Below, piece after piece: positions 16,474-57,996 of a stretch of DNA of 64,000 bases. A program made the position numbers and the translations under genes. The first letter of the stretch is position 1. Each line of letters begins with the position of its first letter. The notes below the pieces were generated by a model. It had not been told where the DNA came from. It saw nothing but the letters and a program-made list of their open reading frames with translations, and searched no databases. The DNA comes from Podarcis cretensis (Eukaryota): the NCBI GenBank assembly GCA_951804945.1, contig OX638153.1, forward strand, positions 38,440,001 to 38,504,000. The letters run 5' to 3'.

Positions 16474-16676
16474 CTAGTTTTGGAAATACTATTAAGTATT
16501 CTGCATTGCACTGAGGACAGGCAACACGAGCTGTACTGTTCCCTCTCTGTTTTTCATCCACCCAGCGCTGTAGACAAGTTTGGTGAACCCATTTCGTAGA
16601 GCCTCTACACCTGCATGGTCTCACCCACTCTGCTGTTCTGTCATCCTCATCAGTTGCAAAACACACCCAACAACTC
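16474..16676 (-). CDS. MARCHF5: MARCHF5 coding exon 2, RING-CH domain (SCWVCFATDEDDRTAEWVRPCRCRGSTKWVHQTCLQRWVDEKQRGNSTARVACPQCNAEYLIVFPKL)
   Basis: C4HC3 RING-CH pattern; TTTCAG acceptor, GTAAG donor, 203 nt. Confidence 0.98.
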
Positions 16677-24696: not shown

Positions 24697-25559
24697 GTTG
24701 GCATCTGTCTTGTCTCCAGAGCCAATAGAATGTGTATCCAGGGGTGCAGTCAAACGACTGGAGAATCACAGTGCCTGTTATGGCTGCAGAAACCAGTAAC
24801 TCATAACTGCTGACTTCTGCACTGCTTTTGCTGTGTTAGCAGCACCTAAGTGACCTCTCTGGGGCGAAAGCCTGGGCAGTGTGTCTGGAGGTCCTGGGCT
24901 GCCCAGATAATCAGACCCCCCTCTTGGCCTCACTGATGTGGTCGAAAGGAAAACAGAGCAATACATTTGGCATCAGCTTGGATGCCGGAGTTGCTGGAAG
25001 GATGCATACAAGACGCCATCTAACTGTCTTAGGGACTCCACTCTGGATTTGTGTAGGGTTGGCTCCTTGGCCTTTTCATCTTTCAAAGACGTCCCACAAG
25101 GCAGTGGGTACAGATTTTTCCTCAGGGTTTACTCCCAAAGCCTTTCTTATGGATGAGTATAGCTGCAAGGCAATGGAGGTTTTGATCAGGTTTTCCTTTT
25201 CCTTAATGGCCTACCTCACCAGGTTGATGAGCCATCTGCCCCTCACCTCCCACTACAGCATGTGCAGAAACCACCTTCTTGACTGTTGGATCCACTATTT
25301 GTCTTATCCACTCAAACCACTAACACCTGTCTTGATGTGCAGGGGAAGTCCTTAACACACTGAGGGTTTGAGACCCATTGGCTACCCTCAGCTGTTTTAG
25401 CCAGCCAGCTGAAGCCATTTCCTGAGGTGTGGCCACTGCTGCATGCTGACAGCTTCTAAGAGCCACAGGTGAGAGCTGACTGAGTGCAGGATGGGAACCA
25501 AAGGTGGACAAACCACCCCAGACAGCATGATGTGTCCCCCACCAGAGGTACTACCCCTC
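24697..25559 (-). mobile_element. Non-autonomous RTE-clade retroelement (5'UTR plus RTE-type 3' tail, no RT)
   Basis: Minus-strand 3' end ...ATTGGCTCTGGAGACAAGACAGATGCCAAC resembles RTE 3' tails; G-rich 5' end; homologous second copy at 29925-30340. Confidence 0.7.
25384..25559 (-). ncRNA. Candidate HDV-like self-cleaving ribozyme (probably decayed) at the 5' end of the RTE-derived element
   Basis: Manual fold: P2 CUCACCUGU/ACAGCUGAG (8/9 bp), P3 GGC/GCC, L3 UCUUAG plus inserted hairpin, P1' ACACCUC pairing with GGGGUG or GGGGU, P1.1 CU/AG, J1.1/4 GAAA, P4 UGGC/GCUG, then G-C-UAA with the catalytic-C candidate at 25400. Confidence 0.6.
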
Positions 25560-26928
25560 GTCCAACAGCCCATATCAACACCCAGTATCAATCCCTTATA
25601 TCCAGTAACTACAATACAGGCAACACATGATTTGTGTGGGAGTTGCATTCTGGGTCATCACATGCGACGGCGGAGCATGCATATGCCTGCTTCGCTCCTG
25701 TCCCCTTTCCAGCCACTTCCAGGTTGCTGCAGTGCCCTATCATGGTCGTGCATCAGTTGGACACACATAAATTCATTGTTGCCTATATTATTGGAATGCA
25801 ATTAAATGAGACTGTGGTTCCTCAGTTGACTAATGTAACCATTTTGCCTTACTCAAGTCAATAGGGCTGTTCTCAAAGATATGGGAATTTACCTTCTGTT
25901 ACTAAGTGAAAAAAGCACAGGCTAAGTCTGGGTTATTTCCATTATCATGCCACCTACCACAACAGAAAAGCAATATACTTTATATAGAATTACTAACAGG
26001 ACCCGTCTCTTACATGTTATTACTGTAGATAAAAGGTAAGCCAACAAAAACTGTGGAACTACAGTGATCACTGTAGCAGTACACAATATGGAATGAAAAG
26101 ATAGTACAGCAACCCATAGTCATATAGCTGGATCTCAACTCTACAAGAATCCTTTGAAAAGTTGTCCCAACCCTCCACATACTAGGCTTCTAACTTAATC
26201 TTTATTCTCTGCTTCTCCCCTGCAACCACAAAGCCAGAACAGTAGCACTCCTGTCCTTCTGGGCCACAGAATTCAAACTCTTTTGGAATGAAGGCCTGGG
26301 GACTCTGAAGTAGTCAGTGCTGAAGGATAGTGACAAAGACATAGAAAAGGTTATTCAGACATGCAATGGTAGTTAGTATGAGCACAAAGTTGCTCCATGT
26401 GGTGGAAACATCCATGATCACAACTCATTGTTTTATATGCAAGATCTGTAAGCTACTAAAATAGGGGTTGTGGGTGTTGACATAGATGTTTTTAACAGCA
26501 CTGTAGGGGCTACTAATTTTACGATTACTGCAAGGTGAACTTAGCGACAGTTTGTACTGGAAGACATTTGACAGCAAACGGTGCGTGTGTGTGTTACGTG
26601 GGCCCAAGGCCTCATTAACCCTCAGAATGCTCATGGTGGGGGCAGAGCAGCAACTCTCCAATCCCCCCCCCCCAAAAAAATGACACAAACAGCCCTGCGT
26701 TTCTTTTTGAGCCCTCGTTGCCACATCCGCTCAGGCCTTGGGCAAGCAGCCCCCCTCAAATTCCCCCCGTGACTTTCTGCACGCATATAGGCCGTGGCGG
26801 CCCAGGATGGTGCGGTGCCTCCACGCGTGCTTTCCCTTCGACCCGGTTCCTGCTCCAAAATCACCCCCTCAAGGCGCACCTGGAAACGGGCCCGCCTGAC
26901 CTCCCGCAGCTCCGCTTCTTTCCCGTAC

Positions 26929-26972
26929 CTGTCCATGGTCTGCGGTATCAGCAAGCCCGTCTGCTCCGACAT
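26929..26972 (-). CDS. MARCHF5: MARCHF5 coding exon 1 (MSEQTGLLIPQTMDR)
   Basis: ATG at 26972, CAG|GTACGG donor, 44 nt (phase 2) joining exon 2 in frame; total CDS 846 nt. Confidence 0.92.
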
Positions 26973-27328
26973 CCTCTCCGGGTGCGGGGAGCCCGGGGGC
27001 TCGGCTACGACAGGCGCCAGGAGCCGGTCGGGGGAAGCAAGGCCCAGAGCCTGCCGCCAAGGAGGAGGAGCAGGAAGCGGCAGGAGGCTCACCTTCCGAG
27101 CGGCGACAGGCCCCTTTGACTAGACGGCGACCTAGGCCGGTAAAGGGGGGGGGGGGGCAAGGAGAGCGAGAGGCACAACAGATCCGCAGCTTCGGAGCGG
27201 GCGAGGGGGCGGGGAGGAGCGAGGGCAACTGCGCACGCGCGGGGCCCTCTTACCTCACAGAGGAACCGCCGCTGCGCCTGGTTCCCTTCTCGCCCACTCC
27301 GAGCTGAGATACCGCAGAGCGCGCCCAA

Positions 27329-27349
27329 GGCACCATGGGAGATGTAGTT
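27329..27349 (-). promoter_or_regulatory. ZNF143/THAP11 (SBS) motif ACTACATCTCCCATGGTGCC
   Basis: Matches ACTACAnnTCCCAnnnTGC, a motif known to be enriched at bidirectional promoters. Confidence 0.8.
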
Positions 27350-27389
27350 CCCGCTCTTCGCCGGCCCTGAGGGGGGGATTTAAATTCCC

Positions 27390-27592
27390 CTTTCCCTCCC
27401 CCTCCCAACCCCCTCGCCCCTGCCGCCTTCTTCTCCTTCTTCTAACGGCGCGTTCGCTCGCGACAGTTGCTCGTTGCCCTGCTCCTCCTCGCCCGCCGCT
27501 GCCGCCGCTGCGTGAGAGCGCGGGCCGGCCGGGGCTGGGGTTTTGCCTTCGGCTGGGGGAGCGGCGAGATGGCTACGCTCGCTGAGGGAAAG
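27390..27592 (+). other. CPEB3: Probable CPEB3 exon 1 (5' leader; start approximate)
   Basis: GC-rich leader just downstream of the promoter motif, ending in an AAG|GTCAGC donor; orientation and position fit the conserved head-to-head CPEB3/MARCHF5 arrangement. Confidence 0.6.
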
Positions 27593-28019
27593 GTCAGCAC
27601 ACACCTCGACGCTGTCAATTCTTGCTCCTTGCTCCCCACCCTCCCTTCCTTCCTTGGGGAGGAGGAAACAGAGAGAGATGGGCGAGTGTTTCCACAACTC
27701 TCATTTCCCCCGCTCCCTGTGCGGAGACGGTCGTGGGGTGAGGTGGGGTGGGGAGAGGTATTTTTCGGTTACATCATCACATTGAAGCTCCTTCGGCCCC
27801 CTTTGCCTTGCCTTCCCCACTGGTACAGGTGCGCCTCCTTTGTCCCAGGGCATGCAGCGGGGGGGGGGGGGCAACTCTCTCCCACCCACCCCTCGTCACA
27901 GACGTCCTTTTGGGGCAAAGGGGTGGCTGGGCTGTAACTCCTTGACTGACGGTGCTCGCTTAAAGAACTTCATGTACAGTATACTTGTTTGTTACCTTGA
28001 CCTAAGCCTTTCCTCCAGG

Positions 28020-29924: not shown

Positions 29925-30340
29925 GTTGGTGGTGGTGGTGGCGGCGGCACCTGTCTGTCTTGAGAGACAATAAAGTGTGCTTCACGGGGTGAAATCAAAC
30001 TGCTGCATAAACAGCACCAAAGTGACCTCCTCGTGGCACAAGCCTGGGCTGCTGAGATGACAAGACCCCTCTCTCAGCCTTGTTGATGTGGTCCAAAGGA
30101 AAGTAGAGTGATACATTTGGCACAAGCTTAGCTGCAGGAGTTGTTGTAAGGAGGCGTAGAAAGCACCATCTTACCATCTTAGGGACTGCACTCCAGGTTT
30201 GTGTAGGGTTAACTCCTTGGCCTTTTCATCTTCCAAAGGTGTCCCACAAGGCAGTGGGTACAGATTTTTCCTCAGAGTTTACTCCCAAACTACCCCCAAC
30301 GGAGCATGATGTGTCCCCCAGTAGAGGTACCACCCCTCCC
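29925..30340 (-). mobile_element. Second copy of the RTE-derived element, internally deleted
   Basis: Collinear with 24697-25139 and 25509-25559; (CCA)n-like tail; lacks the ribozyme core. Confidence 0.8.
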
Positions 30341-35337: not shown

Positions 35338-36222
35338 ATGCAGGATGATTTACTGATGGACAAAAGCAAAGCCCAGCCCCAGCAGCAGCGGCAGCAGCAG
35401 CAGCAAGATCCAAACGCAGCAGAAGCCCCTTCTACGCCCATCACGTCAGAGACACCCAAACAGGAGGACAGCAGCCCAGTGACTAGCATCGGCTCAGCAG
35501 CTCCTGCCCAAAATAGCAAGGAAAAGATGCAGATGGAGTCCCCCATCTTGCCAGGCTTAAGTTTCCACCAGCCTCAGCAGGAACCTACAGCCGGCACCTC
35601 CTTGTCTCCCTCCTTCGGAAGCACCTGGTCTACTGGGACCACAAATGCAGTGGATGATAGCTTTTTCCAAGGGATTACCCCTGTCAATGGGACAATGCTT
35701 TTCCAGAATTTCCCTCACCATGTAAATCCAGTTTTTGGTGGCACTTTCTCCCCCCAGATTGGCCTAGCTCAGACTCAGCACCACCAACAGCAGCAGCAGC
35801 AAGCCCAGCAGCAGCAAAGGAGATCGCCAGTCAGCCCCAATCAGGCATCTTTTGCCCAGAGAAATGCTGCTTATAGCCATCAGCCCATCATGACCAGCAA
35901 ACCTTCCTCCTCCTCAGCTTCCACCTCTTCTCCTTCCAGCTGGAATAACCACCAAAATGCTGCCTGGAGTACACCTTCCAATCCTTGGGGCGGGCTGCAA
36001 GCTGGCAGGGACCCTCGAAGGGCAGTAGGTGTGGGTGTTGGTGTAGGAGTGGGAGTTGGAGTGCCATCCCCACTTAATCCCATTTCACCTCTTAAGAAGC
36101 CCTTCTCTAGCAATGTCATTGCCCCACCAAAGTTTCCACGGGCTGCTCCCCTAACCCCAAAATCCTGGATGGAAGACAACGCCTTCAGGACTGACAATGG
36201 TAACAATCTGTTGCCTTTTCAG
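35338..36222 (+). CDS. CPEB3: CPEB3 first coding exon (exon starts 35327; Q/S/P-rich prion-like N-terminal region, 295 codons)
   Basis: MQDDLLMDKSKAQPQ...SFGSTWSTGTTNAVDDSFFQGITPVNGTMLFQNFPHHVNPVFGGTFSPQIGLAQTQHHQQ...RRAVGVGVG...KSWMEDNAFRTDNGNNLLPFQ; TTTCAG acceptor 11 nt before the ATG; CAG|GTAATG donor. Confidence 0.98.
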
Positions 36223-37497
36223 GTAATGTCTTTTATTTGAGTAAAGAAGGGGAAGTGATATTTCAGTATTTGTCTCATAATATAATTCTATGTTACATCA
36301 AACACCGCTTTTGTCATTCTAGCACATGCCTGACTTCATTAGCTATTTTCACTGAAATAATTCAAGCTATATAGTAGCTGAGGGCACTCACATATGTTAA
36401 AAATCTCAAGTGAAAATTATAGTCAGGTTGTGATTCAATATTCTTTGTTTCCCTTTAATTTTGACTTTAAGGATCAGAAATATTTGCTTCTCGGTGCTCC
36501 TTTTCTTCCCACCCTTCTTCCTAGGATGTATCATGTTCCAGTATTTTAATTGGTACAGTATTATTTATTTTTTTTAAATCTGAAATATAGGAACATTAAT
36601 GGATCCATTAATGTAGTTGGCTTCAAATTTGAAATTAAATGGCTGACTAAAACCGAGAACAGTTTAGGAATCTCGTTAATTACCTTCTGCATATTAAAGG
36701 GCCAAACCCTTTCTGCTTTAAAGGGCTTTACTTTATTAGTCCTGAGAAATGAGGTTCAGCAGGATTGGGTTTGCAAAATCAGGCAGATGAATGCAAATAA
36801 AATGCTGAAATTGCTGAAGTGTAATCATGATAATGTGTTTAGGGTGTGGGTTTGAAGGAGTTTTGGATGTGTGTTGACTTGAGTATCATTTGCTTTCAAT
36901 AAGGAAATTTCTAATGGCAACATGCAAGATTAAGAAATACAGGGAACGTATTTGTGTGAATGAATTTCTTAAACTTCAGTTTTATGCCTTATCAGAGGAA
37001 AGATACAATAGGACATGACCTTCACAACCATATTGCAATGGAGCCTATTTACTAGCTACATAAGCCCTGAAATATTTAAAGCAGCAGTGTCCTTCATTGG
37101 TTTTGTTATCTAAGATGTCAGGGCGGATCAATTGCAACAACTGAAACTGGGGAAAATAGAAGCTCTGAAATTTTAATGTAGAATGGAACTTGTCTTGGTG
37201 TTAAATGCCGCCTCAACTGAATAATTGGCACATGCACTTTACCTTGTATCCTGTATCAGATTATGAAGATAGAAGCTTTTTTGTTTTATGTTGGTTGCCC
37301 CAAGTTGTTGCCTCTAAATGCATAAATTGGACTCTTAAAGGGCAGTGAAATCACTTTGTTTTCTGGTTTCAAAGGAACACTCTTTTAAAGTTACATTTTC
37401 CAATTCAGGCAATAAATTACAATAAACAGTTACTGTTGGGATTGATTTTAAAATCCAGTATATTCAGTAGTGCAGAATAAAATCTTTTACGAATACC

Positions 37498-44198: not shown

Positions 44199-44437
44199 AG
44201 AGCCAGTGTGGTGTAATGGTTAAGAGCAGTAGACTCGTAATCTGGTGAACCGGGTTTGCTTCCCCGCTCCTCCACATGCAGCTGCTGGGTGACCTTGGGC
44301 TAGTCACACTTCTTTGAAGTCTCTCAGCCTCACTCACCTCACAGAGTGTTTGTTGTGGGGGAGGAAGGGAAAGGAGAATGTTAGCTGCTTTGAGACTCCT
44401 TCGGGTAGTGATAAAGCGGGATATCAAATCCAAACTC
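44199..44437 (+). mobile_element. tRNA-derived SINE (Squam2-like), full length
   Basis: A box TGGTGTAATGG, B-box-like GGTTTGCTTCC, CORE-like body, end GGGATATCAAATCCAAACTC. Confidence 0.85.
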
Positions 44438-45645
44438 GTTTTAAGTGGACACTTGTATTCCTGTTAGTATCTGTTGGATTTGAACTGATTTGGATATGTG
44501 TTGTAGCTTTACATTGTTTTTATATTTATATAATTATTCCAAAGTTGTTTTATACTGGTGCTCAGCAGTGACTTGTGAGGATGTCACATGCCCTCCCTTT
44601 TTTGTTTCTTTTCATGGGAAACTGTACTTATGTTACCTAGGTTCTTCCATGAGAAGCATGCTCTTGGGTATGTTTGCATAAAAATTGGGGACAGAATGGT
44701 TCTTTGGGGAAAAATGGGCTGAAGAGGGACTGTCTAGCTTAGACTGGCTGGTGAGCCAAGATCACAAATCCCCGGGCATGATTGCCCCAGTGTAACACTC
44801 AAGACCTACAACTTATTCCTTCAGGGCATTGCTAGGCAAAACCAAATTAGATGCAACTGAGCTGAGGGGACAGAGGGACAGAGACCTGGAATATCCCATG
44901 CTTGAAAGGAAATGGAAAGTTGTATAAGGTTGTGCTCCATGGGCCAACCAAAACTTGTTTTATAGGCATGTTGGATTTACCACTGCCTTTTCCATAAGCA
45001 TATACGTCACCTGTAAATGTGTGTTGGCACTGTGGAATATAATAGGCAACACTGAAAAACACAGTCTTGTCCTGTCCTGTGATGGTGCTATTTTGGTCAC
45101 AGGTTATCATTCTTTTTAATCTGCTCTTGGGAAAACCTCTAAAATTTTCAGGTGCTGGTCTCATATTCAATTATATCCCAGCACTGTAGAATCTGACCAG
45201 GGGCAATGAAATTGGGTTCTATGTCCCCTTTTGGTGGCCAAAAGTATTCTAAGGAATTCACCATAGCCACAATCATTCAGGGATCACAAGACTTGTCAAC
45301 TCTTGCCTAGCTTGAAAAAGTGACCTTTGGCAGTAGTAACAGATACACAAGCACACATACATTTGGTCTTCATATATAGTACTATTTGAATCAGGTAGGT
45401 TCATCAGCCTTTCTGGACCAGTGGACACATTTTTAATTTTGAGAGGGTGCTGTGGATGCCAGTCACAAAATAGCTGCCATGGAAGTGTAGCATAACAATA
45501 AATTAGACAGCACAGTCCTGGCAAAGCTTTTCCCATAACTATATTCCATACTCAAGCCATGACTGTACTGTCTAATTCATATATGAAGACCAAATGTCTG
45601 AGTGCCTGTGCACCTGCTCCTACCTGCCCAAGGCCACTTTGGTTA

Positions 45646-45917
45646 AAGAAGAAGAAGAAGAGGAGGAGTTTGGATTTGATATCCCGCCTTTCACTCCCTT
45701 TAAGGAGTCTCAAAGCGGCTAACATTCTCCTTTCCCTTCCTCCCCCACAACAGACACTCTGTGAGGTGAGTGGGGCTGAGAGACTTCAAAGAAGTGTGAC
45801 TGGCCCAAGGTCACCCAGCAGCTGCATGTGGAGGAGCGGAGATGCAAACCCGGTTCCCCAGATTCTACCGCTCTACCCGGTTCTACCGCTCTTAACCACT
45901 ACACCACACTGGCTCTC
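45646..45917 (-). mobile_element. tRNA-derived SINE (Squam2-like), full length, inverted relative to 44199-44437
   Basis: Reverse complement of the 44199 copy with a (TTC)n tail and a small internal duplication around TTCTACCGCTCT. Confidence 0.88.
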
Positions 45918-48226: not shown

Positions 48227-51200
48227 AGGCTAGTTATTTAAACTGATCATACAGTGATAAAACTGAAGCTTTCAAAATGTGCTCTTTGAACCTAGTGCAA
48301 TTTCTTGGGTGTGTGTGGGAAAGCATTATGGTTAACTGACATTGCAGATGTTCTGGTTGTAGTTATTTAAAAGCTTAAATCATACTGTTTCAGGATACAG
48401 ACTTGTGTGTACTTGTAAAACGTTAGCAGATATACTGAGAGTAGATATATGTTTGAATTCAACACTTTTTAAAATTGTAGGTTATAACAATAATAGGAAT
48501 AACCAGAAAAATATGTATTATTTTTCACTGCTTATGTTGATAAACTCTTATGTCCCTGTAGCTTTTGGGATTTCTCTTCTGGAATATTTCCTGTAGTTTA
48601 TTGGCTTGTAGGAGTTTTGGATGTTGCTACTAAAATAAGAATAGAATAAATTAACATTATGTTGAATCAGAAGGGTTAGAGGTCTTAAGATGTTCTGCTG
48701 CTTTGCCATCATAATAAAATATAAGTAAAATGTACAGCAAAGGTTTGCCCTGGTGTATGCTTTTGAATGGGGAAACTTCTCATAAGTAAAAACTTCTGAT
48801 TACTTCAGGATGATCCAAAATTTACTTCACTGGGACTGCATTTGAAGACTGATTCACCTGAATAAAACTTCAAATTCTTAACCCTGTTAGTTTTAGGACT
48901 ACAATATCCTCATTATATTGTTGGTTGTCCTGTGGCATTGGAGGTGATTTCAGCTATGTTCTACATCTAGTTGTCACGAAAGACCTCATGCAACTGAGCT
49001 GCTACAGAAGAAAGTGGCTTCTTTGCTCACAACTTCATCATTACATGATGACACTTCCTTTTGTAGCTCTGGCTTGAACTGTGATTTTTCTTTAAATTGC
49101 TTAAACACAATGAGAAGATGGATGCTCACATAATGAGTATTTTCCCACCATGAAAGAAACTAAAAGCAGGCACAAAGCCCTAAATTTTCCAGGAGTTCTT
49201 ACCTCCTCAGGCTATCCTTAGAGCTCTTCACCTGCTACAATATGGGATGATATTGGAATACTAAGTGGGTGGGTTTCAAAGAGGTTCCAGAGTGTGCATG
49301 AAATAACAATAATGTTCACATTATTAGGCCCCAGGTCAAAGTTATTAAGATGTGATGGGAGCAGATCCATAACTGTATAGGGAAAGGTTAGTGTGTTTGA
49401 TTGTAAGAGCAAAATGGGCATGTGAATGTTAAATAGAACACCCCATATTCCACCCCCCCCCCATGCGTACTCTGTTGGCTGTACTCTGAAACCAAAAGTG
49501 AGACCAGCTGAGAGAAAGAGCTTGGGGAGGACAACAGAGAGTTCAATGGCTGGCAGTGGTAGGTATTTGCAGTTTTCACCTGTATGCCACCTTTGCTCTT
49601 TAAATTGCTCCCAACTCCTGCTTTCTACATATATTGTTAAAACTTTGCCCATGAAGCCTACTTAACATTGAGTCTTCTGAGAATTGAGAATCAACAGAAC
49701 AATTATGAATGAGTTGGAAAATAAATGTTTGTTGGGAGACAGCCATGAATATTCATAATTTGAGGACAACATATTGTTGAGCTTGCATAATTAAAGTCTG
49801 TAAAATATCGATATGAGGTCACCCAGACAGGCTGTGAATGATTACTTGAAGCCTCATCAGGGTCAGTCTACAATATTTTAAGCTCATACCAATGGCTTTG
49901 TGGTGGCCAAAACCTATTTGGCTTGTAATTCATGTTCTTGTTAATCACCACCACCACCCTGCTTATTTTTATTCATTTTAAGACATTGTGGCGGCATATT
50001 TTGGCAAAGGGCCACTCACGTGACTCATTAATGTGCTGCTGCATCCCAGAAACTTGCTACATTGGCTTGGATTGTGACCTAGTTGTATGATTTGTGACGT
50101 GTGCCTAAACTGTTGTAGTAGCATTTCTTTGCTAACAGAATGGGTCACAGCTTCGCCAGCATTAAAGATCTGTTATTTTTAAGCCAAGCTATTTTATAGT
50201 CCAGGAATCTACAGATTCAAATAACATTTATCCTTCCTTGTCTTTTGAGCTTTTTAAACTGATGGCCAACTTTGGTATGACTTGTTCTTAAATTTTTGAA
50301 TATAGATGTAAATTTTACCAGTTTTAGTCAATAGAAGTAGTCATTGGCTTTTAAAAATAGATTCATGAAGCAGAATGTGTGAGCAGATTTTTATCTGAAG
50401 CTTGGTGCTAAACAAAATTTAACTGTAACCTAAATGCCACAAGTTCTCAGTCGATCGTAAAAATGTCTGCAGATAATTTGCTGGAGTGCAGTCATAAAAG
50501 TAAGAATAATGACTTCCACTTTCTCCTTTGACAAAAAAGGAAAGTACTCTGTAATATCTTTTTAATCTCCTGCAGAAATAAGTGGTGTTCATTTTTGAAC
50601 TGCTGGGTTAGGTGAGCTAGGTTAACTGTAGGTTTCTGTGTGGTGGTATACCTCTTAATCATGGAATGGAAAAGCATAGGTTTTTCAAAATTGTTCAGCA
50701 AGCATATTATGAAACTGTATTTGAAATATTGTAAACATTAAGTAGAATGAAGTGCTTGAAAGATCAGTTACAAAAACCTGCAAGCCACGGCTCCTACAGA
50801 AAGTAAGAGGACCAAGGAATGTGTGTATAATCAAAGTCACTTTGCTCCTAGGCTCTAACCAGTCCTCCTGATTCCTAGGCCTCTGACAACACTGTCCTCT
50901 TCCTGTTTCTGAGCTCTGTGGAAGGGGAAGCCCACTGTTGAGATAAGCATTATTAAAGTTTGCTAATGGTGGAAATTTCACCCCCTCTCTTCTTTCTAAG
51001 TTGCCAGGTGAATTAAACATTGAAATTGACTGCTAGGCTAGGTCATACACATCACAGATACACTAATAGAGCTTGAAGAATAAATGGCTTGGGGATCAAA
51101 GAAACAGACTGACAAAAGAAAACATTTATTTACAATGTATAACTTACTTCCACAAATTGGGTTATACTGAGCTGTACAGATTGAAATCTCAAGTTGCTAG

Positions 51201-57824: not shown

Positions 57825-57996
57825 NNNNNNNNNNNNNNNNNNNNNNNNNNNNNNNNNNNNNNNNNNNNNNNNNNNNNNNNNNNNNNNNNNNNNNNNNNNN
57901 NNNNNNNNNNNNNNNNNNNNNNNNNNNNNNNNNNNNNNNNNNNNNNNNNNNNNNNNNNNNNNNNNNNNNNNNNNNNNNNNNNNNNNNNNNNNNNNN
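57825..57996. other. Assembly gap (172 N)
   Basis: Run of N. Confidence 1.

What the first reader, a model, noticed from the sequence alone, without database searches (positions are those of the whole stretch)
25384..25559. HDV-like ribozyme fold in an RTE-derived element, sense to MARCHF5 pre-mRNA and about 2 kb from the CPEB3 promoter
Seen (minus strand, 5'->3'): G-rich P1 strand (GGGGUAGU at 25557-25550, or GGGGUG at 25519-25514); P2 CUCACCUGU (25473-25465); P3 GGC; L3 UCUUAG followed by an inserted GCUGU..GCAGU hairpin; P3' GCC (25433-25431); P1' ACACCUC (25430-25424); AG-GAAA; P4 UGGC-UUCAGCUG-GCUG; G-C(25400)-UAAA; P2' ACAGCUGAG. P2 pairs 8/9 and extends to 11/12. The nested double-pseudoknot order, the U..G pair in L3, a Watson-Crick P1.1 (C-G, U-A) and the GGCUAA catalytic strand parallel the HDV ribozymes. 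The hairpin inserted at the 3' side of L3 is unusual. Established: HDV-like ribozymes process the 5' ends of RTE, R2 and L1Tc-type retrotransposons, and mammals carry one in CPEB3 intron 2. Inference: a mobile HDV-like ribozyme family is present in lizard genomes. This copy is non-orthologous to the mammalian one but landed at the same locus, and could cut nascent MARCHF5 intron 1. The G-U pairs in P1 and P4 look like C-to-T decay (CpG-type in P4), so it may be slow or dead.
Basis: partly seen in the sequence, partly recalled or inferred. Interest (0 to 1): 0.8.

Follow-up and report, generated by a model that had tools for sequence, protein, structure and literature searches.

The report
Decayed HDV-like ribozyme relic, retroposon 5' end
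The stretch is the first 176 bases of an old copy of a very abundant, non-coding lizard jumping element whose start can be drawn as a hepatitis-delta-type self-cutting RNA. This copy is mutated and probably inactive, and its position beside CPEB3 is a coincidence.

Summary
On their own they are weak evidence. Rfam finds nothing HDV-like, and the fold is no more stable than shuffles.

Context changes the picture. 24703-25559 (minus strand) is one copy of an ORF-less retroposon laid by about 10-13 thousand contigs per run. A canonical-core descriptor with P1 anchored there occurs in 2 of 100,000 composition-matched shuffles. The family's majority letters repair the P2 mismatch and give L3 the HDV-like UCCUAG.

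Best reading (about 0.55): a relic of a 5'-terminal HDV-like processing ribozyme of an RTE-type non-autonomous element, with an unprecedented 22-nt hairpin in L3.

This copy carries defects and stronger competing helices, so it is probably dead.

I could not test covariation or RTE/BovB ancestry because no paralogs could be fetched.

The scan has already noted HDV-like folds at BovB and related 5' ends elsewhere in this genome. The CPEB3 link is chance. The position in MARCHF5 intron 1, sense strand, is confirmed.

The parts
24703..25559 (-). Copy A of an abundant ORF-less non-LTR-type retroposon. Its 5' end is G25559 and its 3' end is near 24703.
   Evidence: Self-BLAST against copy B. About 10-13 thousand contigs per run lie on 24702-25572, and depth falls to single-copy level outside it. 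There are no Pfam domains in any ORF. The (CCR)n tail of copy B fixes the orientation.
25384..25559 (-). Proposed HDV-like fold, made of the first 176 nt of the element.
25553..25559 (-). P1 5' strand GAGGGGU in my register. It starts at the element's first base and pairs 6/7 with P1'.
   Evidence: One search lists the pairs.
25474..25552 (-). J1/2, 79 nt. It contains a stable hairpin (about 25526-25475) and the G-rich runs that compete with P1 and P2.
25465..25473 (-). P2 5' strand CUCACCUGU.
25462..25464 (-). P3 5' strand GGC.
25434..25461 (-). L3, 28 nt. It reads UCUUAG (family majority UCCUAG), then AA, then a hairpin at 25453-25435, then G.
   Evidence: One search gives 25459 A>G and 25439 C>T on the + strand. 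One search gives the hairpin -6.2 kcal/mol.
25431..25433 (-). P3 3' strand GCC.
25424..25430 (-). P1 3' strand ACACCUC.
25422..25423 (-). P1.1 3' strand AG, which pairs with C25460 and U25459.
25402..25417 (-). Weak P4: UGGC/GCUG, 4 bp of which 2 are G-U.
25396..25401 (-). J4/2, GCUAAA, with candidate catalytic C25400.
25387..25395 (-). P2 3' strand ACAGCUGAG. The family majority has G at 25391 (minus strand), which repairs the mismatch, and C at 25395, which loses the terminal pair.
29946..30338 (-). Copy B of the same element. It keeps the first 51 nt and the 3' part, lacks the equivalent of 25140-25508 (the whole ribozyme core), and ends in a (GCC/ACC)n tail.
   Evidence: The joint contig, table 5c, is copy B itself at single-copy depth.
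26929..26972 (-). MARCHF5 exon 1 coding part (MSEQTGLLIPQTMD-R), with donor GT at 26928-26927.
16474..16676 (-). MARCHF5 exon 2 (SCWVCFATDEDD...FPKLG), with an AG acceptor before 16676.

Best explanation
25384-25559 (minus strand) is the 5'-terminal module of one old, fixed copy of a very abundant, ORF-less, LINE-dependent retroposon of about 860 bp.

In the family's source copies this module most likely worked as an HDV-like self-cleaving ribozyme, or descends from one. An element read through from an upstream promoter would fold P1 from its own first base. C25400 in J4/2 would act as general acid and cut just 5' of G25559. That leaves an RNA that starts exactly at the element's first nucleotide and is then copied into new sites by the partner LINE's machinery. 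This is the mechanism established for RTE, R2 and L1Tc/NARTc.

The module has a long, structured J1/2 and an unusual 22-nt hairpin on the 3' side of L3.

This particular copy has drifted. It has a G.A mismatch in P1, a C.C mismatch in P2 and a C-to-U change in L3, and alternative helices are stronger than P1 and P2. It is most likely an inactive relic with no effect on MARCHF5.

Shown here: the repeat nature, the 5'-terminal position, the pairings and the statistics. Inferred: ribozyme function, the RTE/BovB partner and inactivity.
For: - The motif starts at the shared 5' boundary of the family. The copy A/B alignment ends at 25559/30338. A paralog contig ends its match at 25558 with 91 nt of unlike flank beyond it, and depth drops about 50-fold past 25572.
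- Orientation is set by the simple-repeat tail at the other end of copy B.
- P1 GAGGGGU begins at nt 1 and pairs 6/7.
- The canonical core occurs in 163 of 100,000 dinucleotide shuffles of the first 220 nt. Core plus P1 at nt 1 occurs in 2 of 100,000. In the window, the other seven core-only hits are AT- or G-U-rich.
- The core is defined as contiguous P2-P3, L3 starting U-N-Y-N-N-G, contiguous P3'-P1', P1.1 from L3 positions 2-3, and GC-N-AA before P2'.
- The near-universal family letters make P2 eight contiguous Watson-Crick pairs and make L3 UCCUAG (HDV has UCCUCG). So the family fold is no worse than this copy's. That is the opposite of what a private chance pattern would show.
- UGGCUAA matches the antigenomic HDV J4/2 strand (from my own knowledge).
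[quoted passage not shown] RTE ribozymes have structured J1/2 domains (PMC4908430). R2 J1/2 loops reach 216-498 nt and P4 is dispensable (PMC3774820). Non-Watson-Crick P1.1 pairs are tolerated (PMC13635239). L1Tc and its non-autonomous NARTc share a 5' ribozyme (PMC3383444).
- Unchecked leads from this scan: HDV-like folds at BovB 5' ends in the same genome.
Against: - No Rfam HDV-type match appears even at E<=10 on 196 nt.
- The MFE is no better than shuffles, z = +0.44.
- Window-wide, loose descriptors hit as often in shuffles.
- L3 is 28 nt, against about 7-8 nt in every HDV-like ribozyme I know of.
- The first P1 pair is G-C, not the usual G.U, and P1 has an internal mismatch.
- In the family majority the second P1.1 pair becomes C.A.
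- P4 is feeble.
- Some descriptor limits (L3<=35, P2>=8/9) were set after seeing the candidate.
- There is no covariation test, because only two copies were available and copy B lacks the core.
- RTE/BovB ancestry was not verified.
- This copy's private changes are mixed: two weaken proposed pairs and two create them.
Confidence: 0.55

Rival explanations
1. Chance resemblance. The 5' region is rich in G runs and CACC-type runs that can be drawn in many ways. The HDV-like drawing is one of these and the family never had a ribozyme.
For: - The relaxed descriptor gives 21 real hits against 18 in shuffles. The canonical-letter descriptor hits at least once in 19% of shuffled windows.
- The anchored relaxed descriptor still appears in 0.75% of local shuffles.
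- There is no Rfam hit, and MFE z = +0.44.
- Three different G-rich strands can pair with the same P1'. Competing helices beat P1 and P2.
- A 28-nt L3 is outside the known range.
- The RNArobo paper warns that loose HDV descriptors give many matches (PMC4870747).
Against: - Core plus P1 at nt 1 appears in 2 of 100,000 composition-matched shuffles.
- The position at a retroposon 5' terminus is exactly where such ribozymes are known to sit.
- The family-majority letters improve P2 and L3 rather than degrade them.
- The L3 and J4/2 letters match HDV.
Confidence: 0.33
2. This copy is still an active ribozyme that cuts nascent MARCHF5 intron 1 and so influences MARCHF5 or CPEB3 expression.
For: It is in sense orientation in intron 1. 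All the core elements can be drawn, and P1.1 is Watson-Crick in this copy.
Against: - P1 and P2 each carry a mismatch, and L3 has C-to-U relative to the family.
- Forcing P1+P3 costs 7 kcal/mol relative to the MFE, and forcing P2+P3+P4 costs 11. The hairpin 2-7/11-16 and the helix 17-23/87-93 are stronger than P1 and P2.
- No pile of RNA ends was seen, but the runs laid were contigs and cannot show ends.
- The copy is one of thousands, so nothing suggests it was selected at this locus.
Confidence: 0.07
3. The 5' end is a degenerate tRNA-derived SINE head with a Pol III promoter, not a ribozyme.
For: There is a weak tRNA-Sec model match on 25562-25478, minus strand (12.4 bits, E = 7.5). GGUUCCCAUCC at 25499-25489 resembles a B box.
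Against: - The E-value is meaningless at that level, and ARAGORN finds no tRNA.
- The family-majority letters at 25496 and 25491 make the B-box-like string less B-box-like.
Confidence: 0.05

Closest known systems
[quoted passage not shown] 2011, cited through PMC5786205 and PMC4908430)
   Same: Both sit at the exact 5' terminus of a non-LTR element, with P1 starting at the first base. Both have the nested double-pseudoknot order, a long structured J1/2, and a C in J4/2 followed by NAA.
   Different: L3 carries a 22-nt hairpin insertion. There is no Rfam match to RF01788 or any other HDV-type model. The host element is ORF-less, and its RTE ancestry was not verified here. No activity data exist.
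L1Tc / NARTc pair of Trypanosoma cruzi (PMC3383444)
   Same: A non-autonomous element carries the same 5'-terminal HDV-like module as an autonomous LINE.
   Different: It belongs to a different clade. There the module is 77 nt and is also a promoter. Here the autonomous partner was not seen.
R2 ribozymes (PMC3774820)
   Same: They tolerate very long J1/2 loops, weak or absent P4, and 1-2 mismatches in P1 or P2. Few nucleotides are conserved.
   Different: R2 is site-specific in 28S rDNA, and its L3 keeps the normal length.
Mammalian CPEB3 ribozyme (Rfam RF00622)
   Same: It has the same fold class and is intronic and sense to its host gene.
   Different: It lies in CPEB3 intron 2, is single-copy and conserved, and is about 68 nt with a 7-nt L3. 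The lizard motif is a repeat copy in MARCHF5 intron 1 and is not orthologous. Nothing in the window matches RF00622.

Membership tests
HDV-like self-cleaving ribozyme | Nested double-pseudoknot order P1-P2-P3-L3-P3'-P1'-P1.1-P4-J4/2-P2', with P2/P3 and P3'/P1' contiguous | tested here: met
   all elements are present in the right order and contiguity.
HDV-like self-cleaving ribozyme | P1 of 6-7 bp starting at the cleavage site, usually G1.U | tested here: inconclusive
   GAGGGGU/ACACCUC pairs 6/7 with an internal G.A mismatch, and the first pair is G-C, not G.U. Two other G-rich strands also fit P1'.
HDV-like self-cleaving ribozyme | 3-bp P3 closing a short L3 (about 7-8 nt) with U...G and a C for P1.1 | tested here: not met
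   P3 is GGC/GCC, and the first six L3 letters are UCUUAG (family UCCUAG). But L3 is 28 nt with an internal hairpin.
HDV-like self-cleaving ribozyme | P1.1 of two pairs between L3 and the nucleotides after P1' | tested here: met
   This copy has C25460-G25422 and U25459-A25423. The family majority gives C.A at the second pair. Non-Watson-Crick second pairs are tolerated (PMC13635239).
HDV-like self-cleaving ribozyme | Catalytic C in J4/2 followed by NAA before P2' | tested here: met
   GGC(25400)UAAA lies directly before P2'. This is a sequence match only.
HDV-like self-cleaving ribozyme | Covariation supporting P1, P2, P3 and P1.1 | not tested
   Only two copies were available and copy B lacks the core. 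No paralogs could be fetched.
HDV-like self-cleaving ribozyme | Match to a curated covariance model (RF00094, RF00622, RF01787, RF01788, RF02682) | tested here: not met
   No HDV-type match at gathering score or at E<=10. The long J1/2 and L3 would depress any score.
HDV-like self-cleaving ribozyme | Mg2+-dependent, C-dependent self-cleavage | not testable with these tools
   Needs in vitro transcription and cleavage.
Retrotransposon 5'-processing ribozyme | Cleavage site coincides with the element's first nucleotide | tested here: met
   The family boundary is at 25559, which is the first base of P1.
Non-autonomous RTE/BovB derivative | 5' and/or 3' ends homologous to an RTE-clade LINE | not testable with these tools
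There is no BovB/RTE sequence in the window and none could be fetched.
Non-autonomous RTE/BovB derivative | No ORF, a simple-repeat 3' tail, and dispersed high copy number | tested here: met
   No Pfam domain in any ORF. Copy B has a (GCC/ACC)n tail. Thousands of contigs were laid.
CPEB3 ribozyme | Orthologous, single-copy element in CPEB3 intron 2 | tested here: not met
   It lies in MARCHF5 intron 1, is a repeat copy, and gives no RF00622 hit.

The most novel reading that the evidence does not exclude
The source copies of this lizard retroposon family carry an active HDV-like ribozyme whose L3 holds an inserted hairpin. That would be a change to the catalytic core architecture not described for any HDV-like ribozyme. 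Thousands of sense-oriented intronic copies would then make squamate genomes a natural library of such variants, some of which might still nick host pre-mRNAs.
Probability: 0.2. Interest if true: 0.6.

Novelty: new member of a known kind. Interest (0 to 1): 0.3.

Why it matters
If the family module is a real ribozyme, it extends 5'-end processing by HDV-like ribozymes to an abundant squamate non-autonomous retroposon. It would also show that L3 can accept a hairpin, which bears on how tolerant the delta fold is and on how descriptors and covariance models miss such variants.

This individual copy matters little. It is a decayed relic, one of thousands, and its proximity to CPEB3 says nothing about the origin of the mammalian CPEB3 ribozyme.

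Tried and rejected
- **Private insertion idea.** I first read 25140-25508 as a private insertion that would split P1 from the core, because copy B lacks it. I rejected this. Paralog contigs span 25340-25559 without a break, and the only listed joint of that kind is copy B itself at single-copy depth. Copy B is a deletion derivative with CAAA microhomology at the joint.
- **Fetching paralogs.** None of these worked:
  - Protein word search with the 63-aa ORF over the core: blank.
  - An 18-mer pattern in viral and metagenome contigs: only chance matches, no similarity beyond 18-20 nt.
  - A 22-mer pattern in bacterial and archaeal genome contigs: none.
  - Sensitive BLAST and nhmmer inside the window: only copy B.
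- **Coding origin.** I wondered about a LINE ORF2 C-terminus. No ORF has a Pfam hit, so I dropped it.
- **tRNA-like head.** Only an E = 7.5 Rfam match and no ARAGORN call.
- **BovB 3'-tail resemblance.** A stretch at 24745-24765 (+) recalled the BovB 3' tail. It is from memory only, is in the wrong orientation, and I did not use it.
- **Papers.** Ruminski 2011 and Webb & Luptak 2011 are not held.
- **Steps I left out on purpose.** I did not build or fold a consensus or majority-corrected sequence. I only described the effect of the five listed majority letters.

Full report
**Observation**

- P2 (25473-25465) pairs 8/9 with 25395-25387. It reaches 11/12 if two G-U pairs are counted.
- P3 GGC/GCC is contiguous with P2 on one side, and its 3' strand is contiguous with P1' ACACCUC (25430-25424).
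- The two bases after P1' pair with L3 positions 2-3.
- GGCUAA, with C25400, sits just before P2'.
- P4 is four pairs, two of them G-U.

**Is it more than chance when taken alone? No.**
- Rfam finds no family at gathering score in the whole window. It finds no HDV-type model even at E<=10 on 1.4 kb or on 196 nt.
- The 176-nt RNA folds no better than its shuffles: -63.5 against -65.4 kcal/mol, z = +0.44.
It gives 21 hits on the two strands of the window, against a mean of 18 (range 9-37) in dinucleotide shuffles.
- A version tuned to the candidate's own quality gives 2 hits against 0.43.
- Adding canonical letters gives 2 hits against 0.21, and 19% of shuffled windows have at least one. The letters are L3 = U-N-Y-N-N-G and GC-N-AA in J4/2.
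- Over the 700-odd windows of this genome, such drawings would turn up by the hundred.

**What the DNA is**
- Self-comparison shows a second copy at about 29946-30338. It matches 24893-25139 and 25509-25559 at 83-85% identity but lacks 25140-25508.
- Contigs of four public runs, from four coded organisms, were laid at >=80% likeness. They show that 24702-25572 is a very abundant dispersed repeat. About 10-13 thousand contigs were laid per DNA run, and depth falls to single-copy level on both sides.
- Paralog contigs run unbroken across 25340-25559. The one listed contig that joins 25139 to 25524 carries exactly copy B's letters at single-copy depth. So copy B is a private deletion derivative, with CAAA microhomology at the joint, and not the family norm.
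- No ORF in the element has a Pfam match.
- On the minus strand, copy B ends in a (GCC/ACC)n run directly after the shared terminal sequence. No tail follows the other end. I therefore read the element as a minus-strand, LINE-dependent, ORF-less retroposon of about 860 bp, with its 5' end at G25559.
- Unique-flank contigs of organisms B and C run into both ends of the element, so the insertion is shared by close relatives.

**Why this changes the reading**

The motif is the element's first 176 nt. This is GAGGGGU at 25559-25553. A ribozyme that defines the RNA 5' end would leave exactly that arrangement in its daughter copies.

In 100,000 dinucleotide shuffles of the first 220 nt, the canonical core appears 163 times. 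Core plus a P1 starting at nt 1 appears twice. The looser anchored descriptor appears in 0.75% of shuffles. The other seven core-only hits in the real window are AT-rich or G-U-rich.

**Family-majority letters**

One search lists the positions where nearly all family members differ from this copy. Five fall in the motif (+ strand letters):

| Position | Change | Effect on the fold |
|---|---|---|
| 25391 | G>C | Turns the P2 C.C mismatch into C-G, giving eight contiguous Watson-Crick pairs |
| 25395 | T>G | Removes the terminal P2 pair |
| 25459 | A>G | Makes L3 UCCUAG (HDV: UCCUCG); the second P1.1 pair becomes C.A |
| 25439 | C>T | Turns a G-U pair into an A-U pair in the L3 hairpin |
| 25496 | A>G | Lies in J1/2 |

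So the family's fold is at least as good as this copy's. A private chance pattern picked out in one copy should look worse in the family. The signal is modest, since two private changes weaken pairs and two create them. The list is also truncated: 232 differences were not shown.

**Mechanism proposed**

This is the mechanism established for RTE, R2 and L1Tc/NARTc elements.
- RTE ribozymes have structured J1/2 domains that activate the core (PMC4908430).
- R2 ribozymes tolerate J1/2 loops of 216-498 nt, mismatches in P1 and P2, and no P4 (PMC3774820).
- Non-Watson-Crick P1.1 pairs are compatible with fast cleavage (PMC13635239).
- L1Tc and its non-autonomous NARTc share one 5' ribozyme (PMC3383444).

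A read-through transcript would fold, and the J4/2 cytosine would cut 5' of G1. The trimmed RNA would then be reverse-transcribed by the partner LINE.

The 22-nt hairpin on the 3' side of L3 has no precedent that I know of. It is the main structural objection.

**This copy**

It has a G.A mismatch in P1, a C.C mismatch in P2 and a C-to-U change in L3. Enforcing P1+P3 gives -56.4 kcal/mol and enforcing P2+P3+P4 gives -52.6, against an MFE of -63.5. A local hairpin (nt 2-7 with 11-16, -6.1) outcompetes P1 (-5.3). The helix nt 17-23 with 87-93 (-9.6) outcompetes P2 (-7.2). I rate it as probably inactive.

**Locus claims**
- MARCHF5 exon 2 (SCWVCFATDEDD...) is at 16676-16474 on the minus strand, with an AG acceptor before it.
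- Exon 1 (MSEQTGLLIPQTMD, plus a split Arg codon) is at 26972-26929, with donor GT at 26928.
- I checked the exons one at a time and did not join them.
- The motif is therefore sense in intron 1, 1.37 kb below the donor and about 2 kb from the CPEB3 side of the GC-rich island at 26-28 kb.
- These facts are right, but the inference from them is not. There are thousands of copies and two in this window, so one near CPEB3 is expected by chance. The mammalian ribozyme lies in CPEB3 intron 2, and nothing in the window matches RF00622.

**What I could not do**
- No paralogs could be fetched, so there is no covariation test.
- No BovB or RTE sequence was available, so 'RTE-derived' is unverified.
- All runs laid were contigs, which cannot show RNA ends.

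**Earlier notes of this scan**

These are unchecked. Three follow-up reports say that the first 127-128 nt of intact BovB copies in this genome very probably form an HDV-like ribozyme starting at the first base. Four first-reader notes describe the same enlarged-L3 fold at 5' ends of a non-autonomous RTE-type element. So the scan has found this kind of thing before on other DNA of this genome. I treat the notes as leads, not as support.

In the paper library I found no report linking HDV-like ribozymes with Anolis. BovB and ribozymes appear together only as a general remark in PMC5786205.

**Verdict**

| Reading | Probability |
|---|---|
| Family-level HDV-like 5' module, with this copy a dead relic | about 0.55 |
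| Chance | about 0.33 |
| This copy still active on MARCHF5 | about 0.07 |
| tRNA-like SINE head | about 0.05 |

It is a new member of a known kind, and interest is modest.

Noticed in passing
window 29946-30338 (-): Second copy of the same retroposon. It has a 369-bp internal deletion with CAAA microhomology at the joint, which removes the whole proposed ribozyme core but keeps the first 51 nt. It ends in a (GCC/ACC)n tail.
   Followed up: yes
window 26000-28000: GC-rich island (GC 0.57) between MARCHF5 exon 1 (minus strand, ATG at 26972) and the CPEB3 5' region (plus strand). It looks like a shared head-to-head promoter.
   Followed up: partly
window 50020-50196 (+): The only other hit of the canonical-letter HDV descriptor in the window. 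P3 is ATT/AAT and the helices are AT-rich, so it is most likely chance.
   Followed up: no
window 25478-25562 (-): Weak tRNA-Sec covariance-model match (12.4 bits, E = 7.5) over the element's first 80 nt. ARAGORN calls no tRNA.
   Followed up: partly
window ~44300-44450 (+) and ~45650-45800 (-): Two near-identical translated stretches (...SQSVCCGGGRERRMLAALRLL...) on opposite strands about 1.3 kb apart. They look like an inverted pair of another repeat.
   Followed up: no
window 57825-57996: Run of 172 N (assembly gap or masked). Left untouched.
   Followed up: no
window 35338-36240 (+): A 300-aa ORF, the longest in the window. It is probably the first large CPEB3 coding exon (compare scan note s1-836714). 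I did not check it.
   Followed up: no
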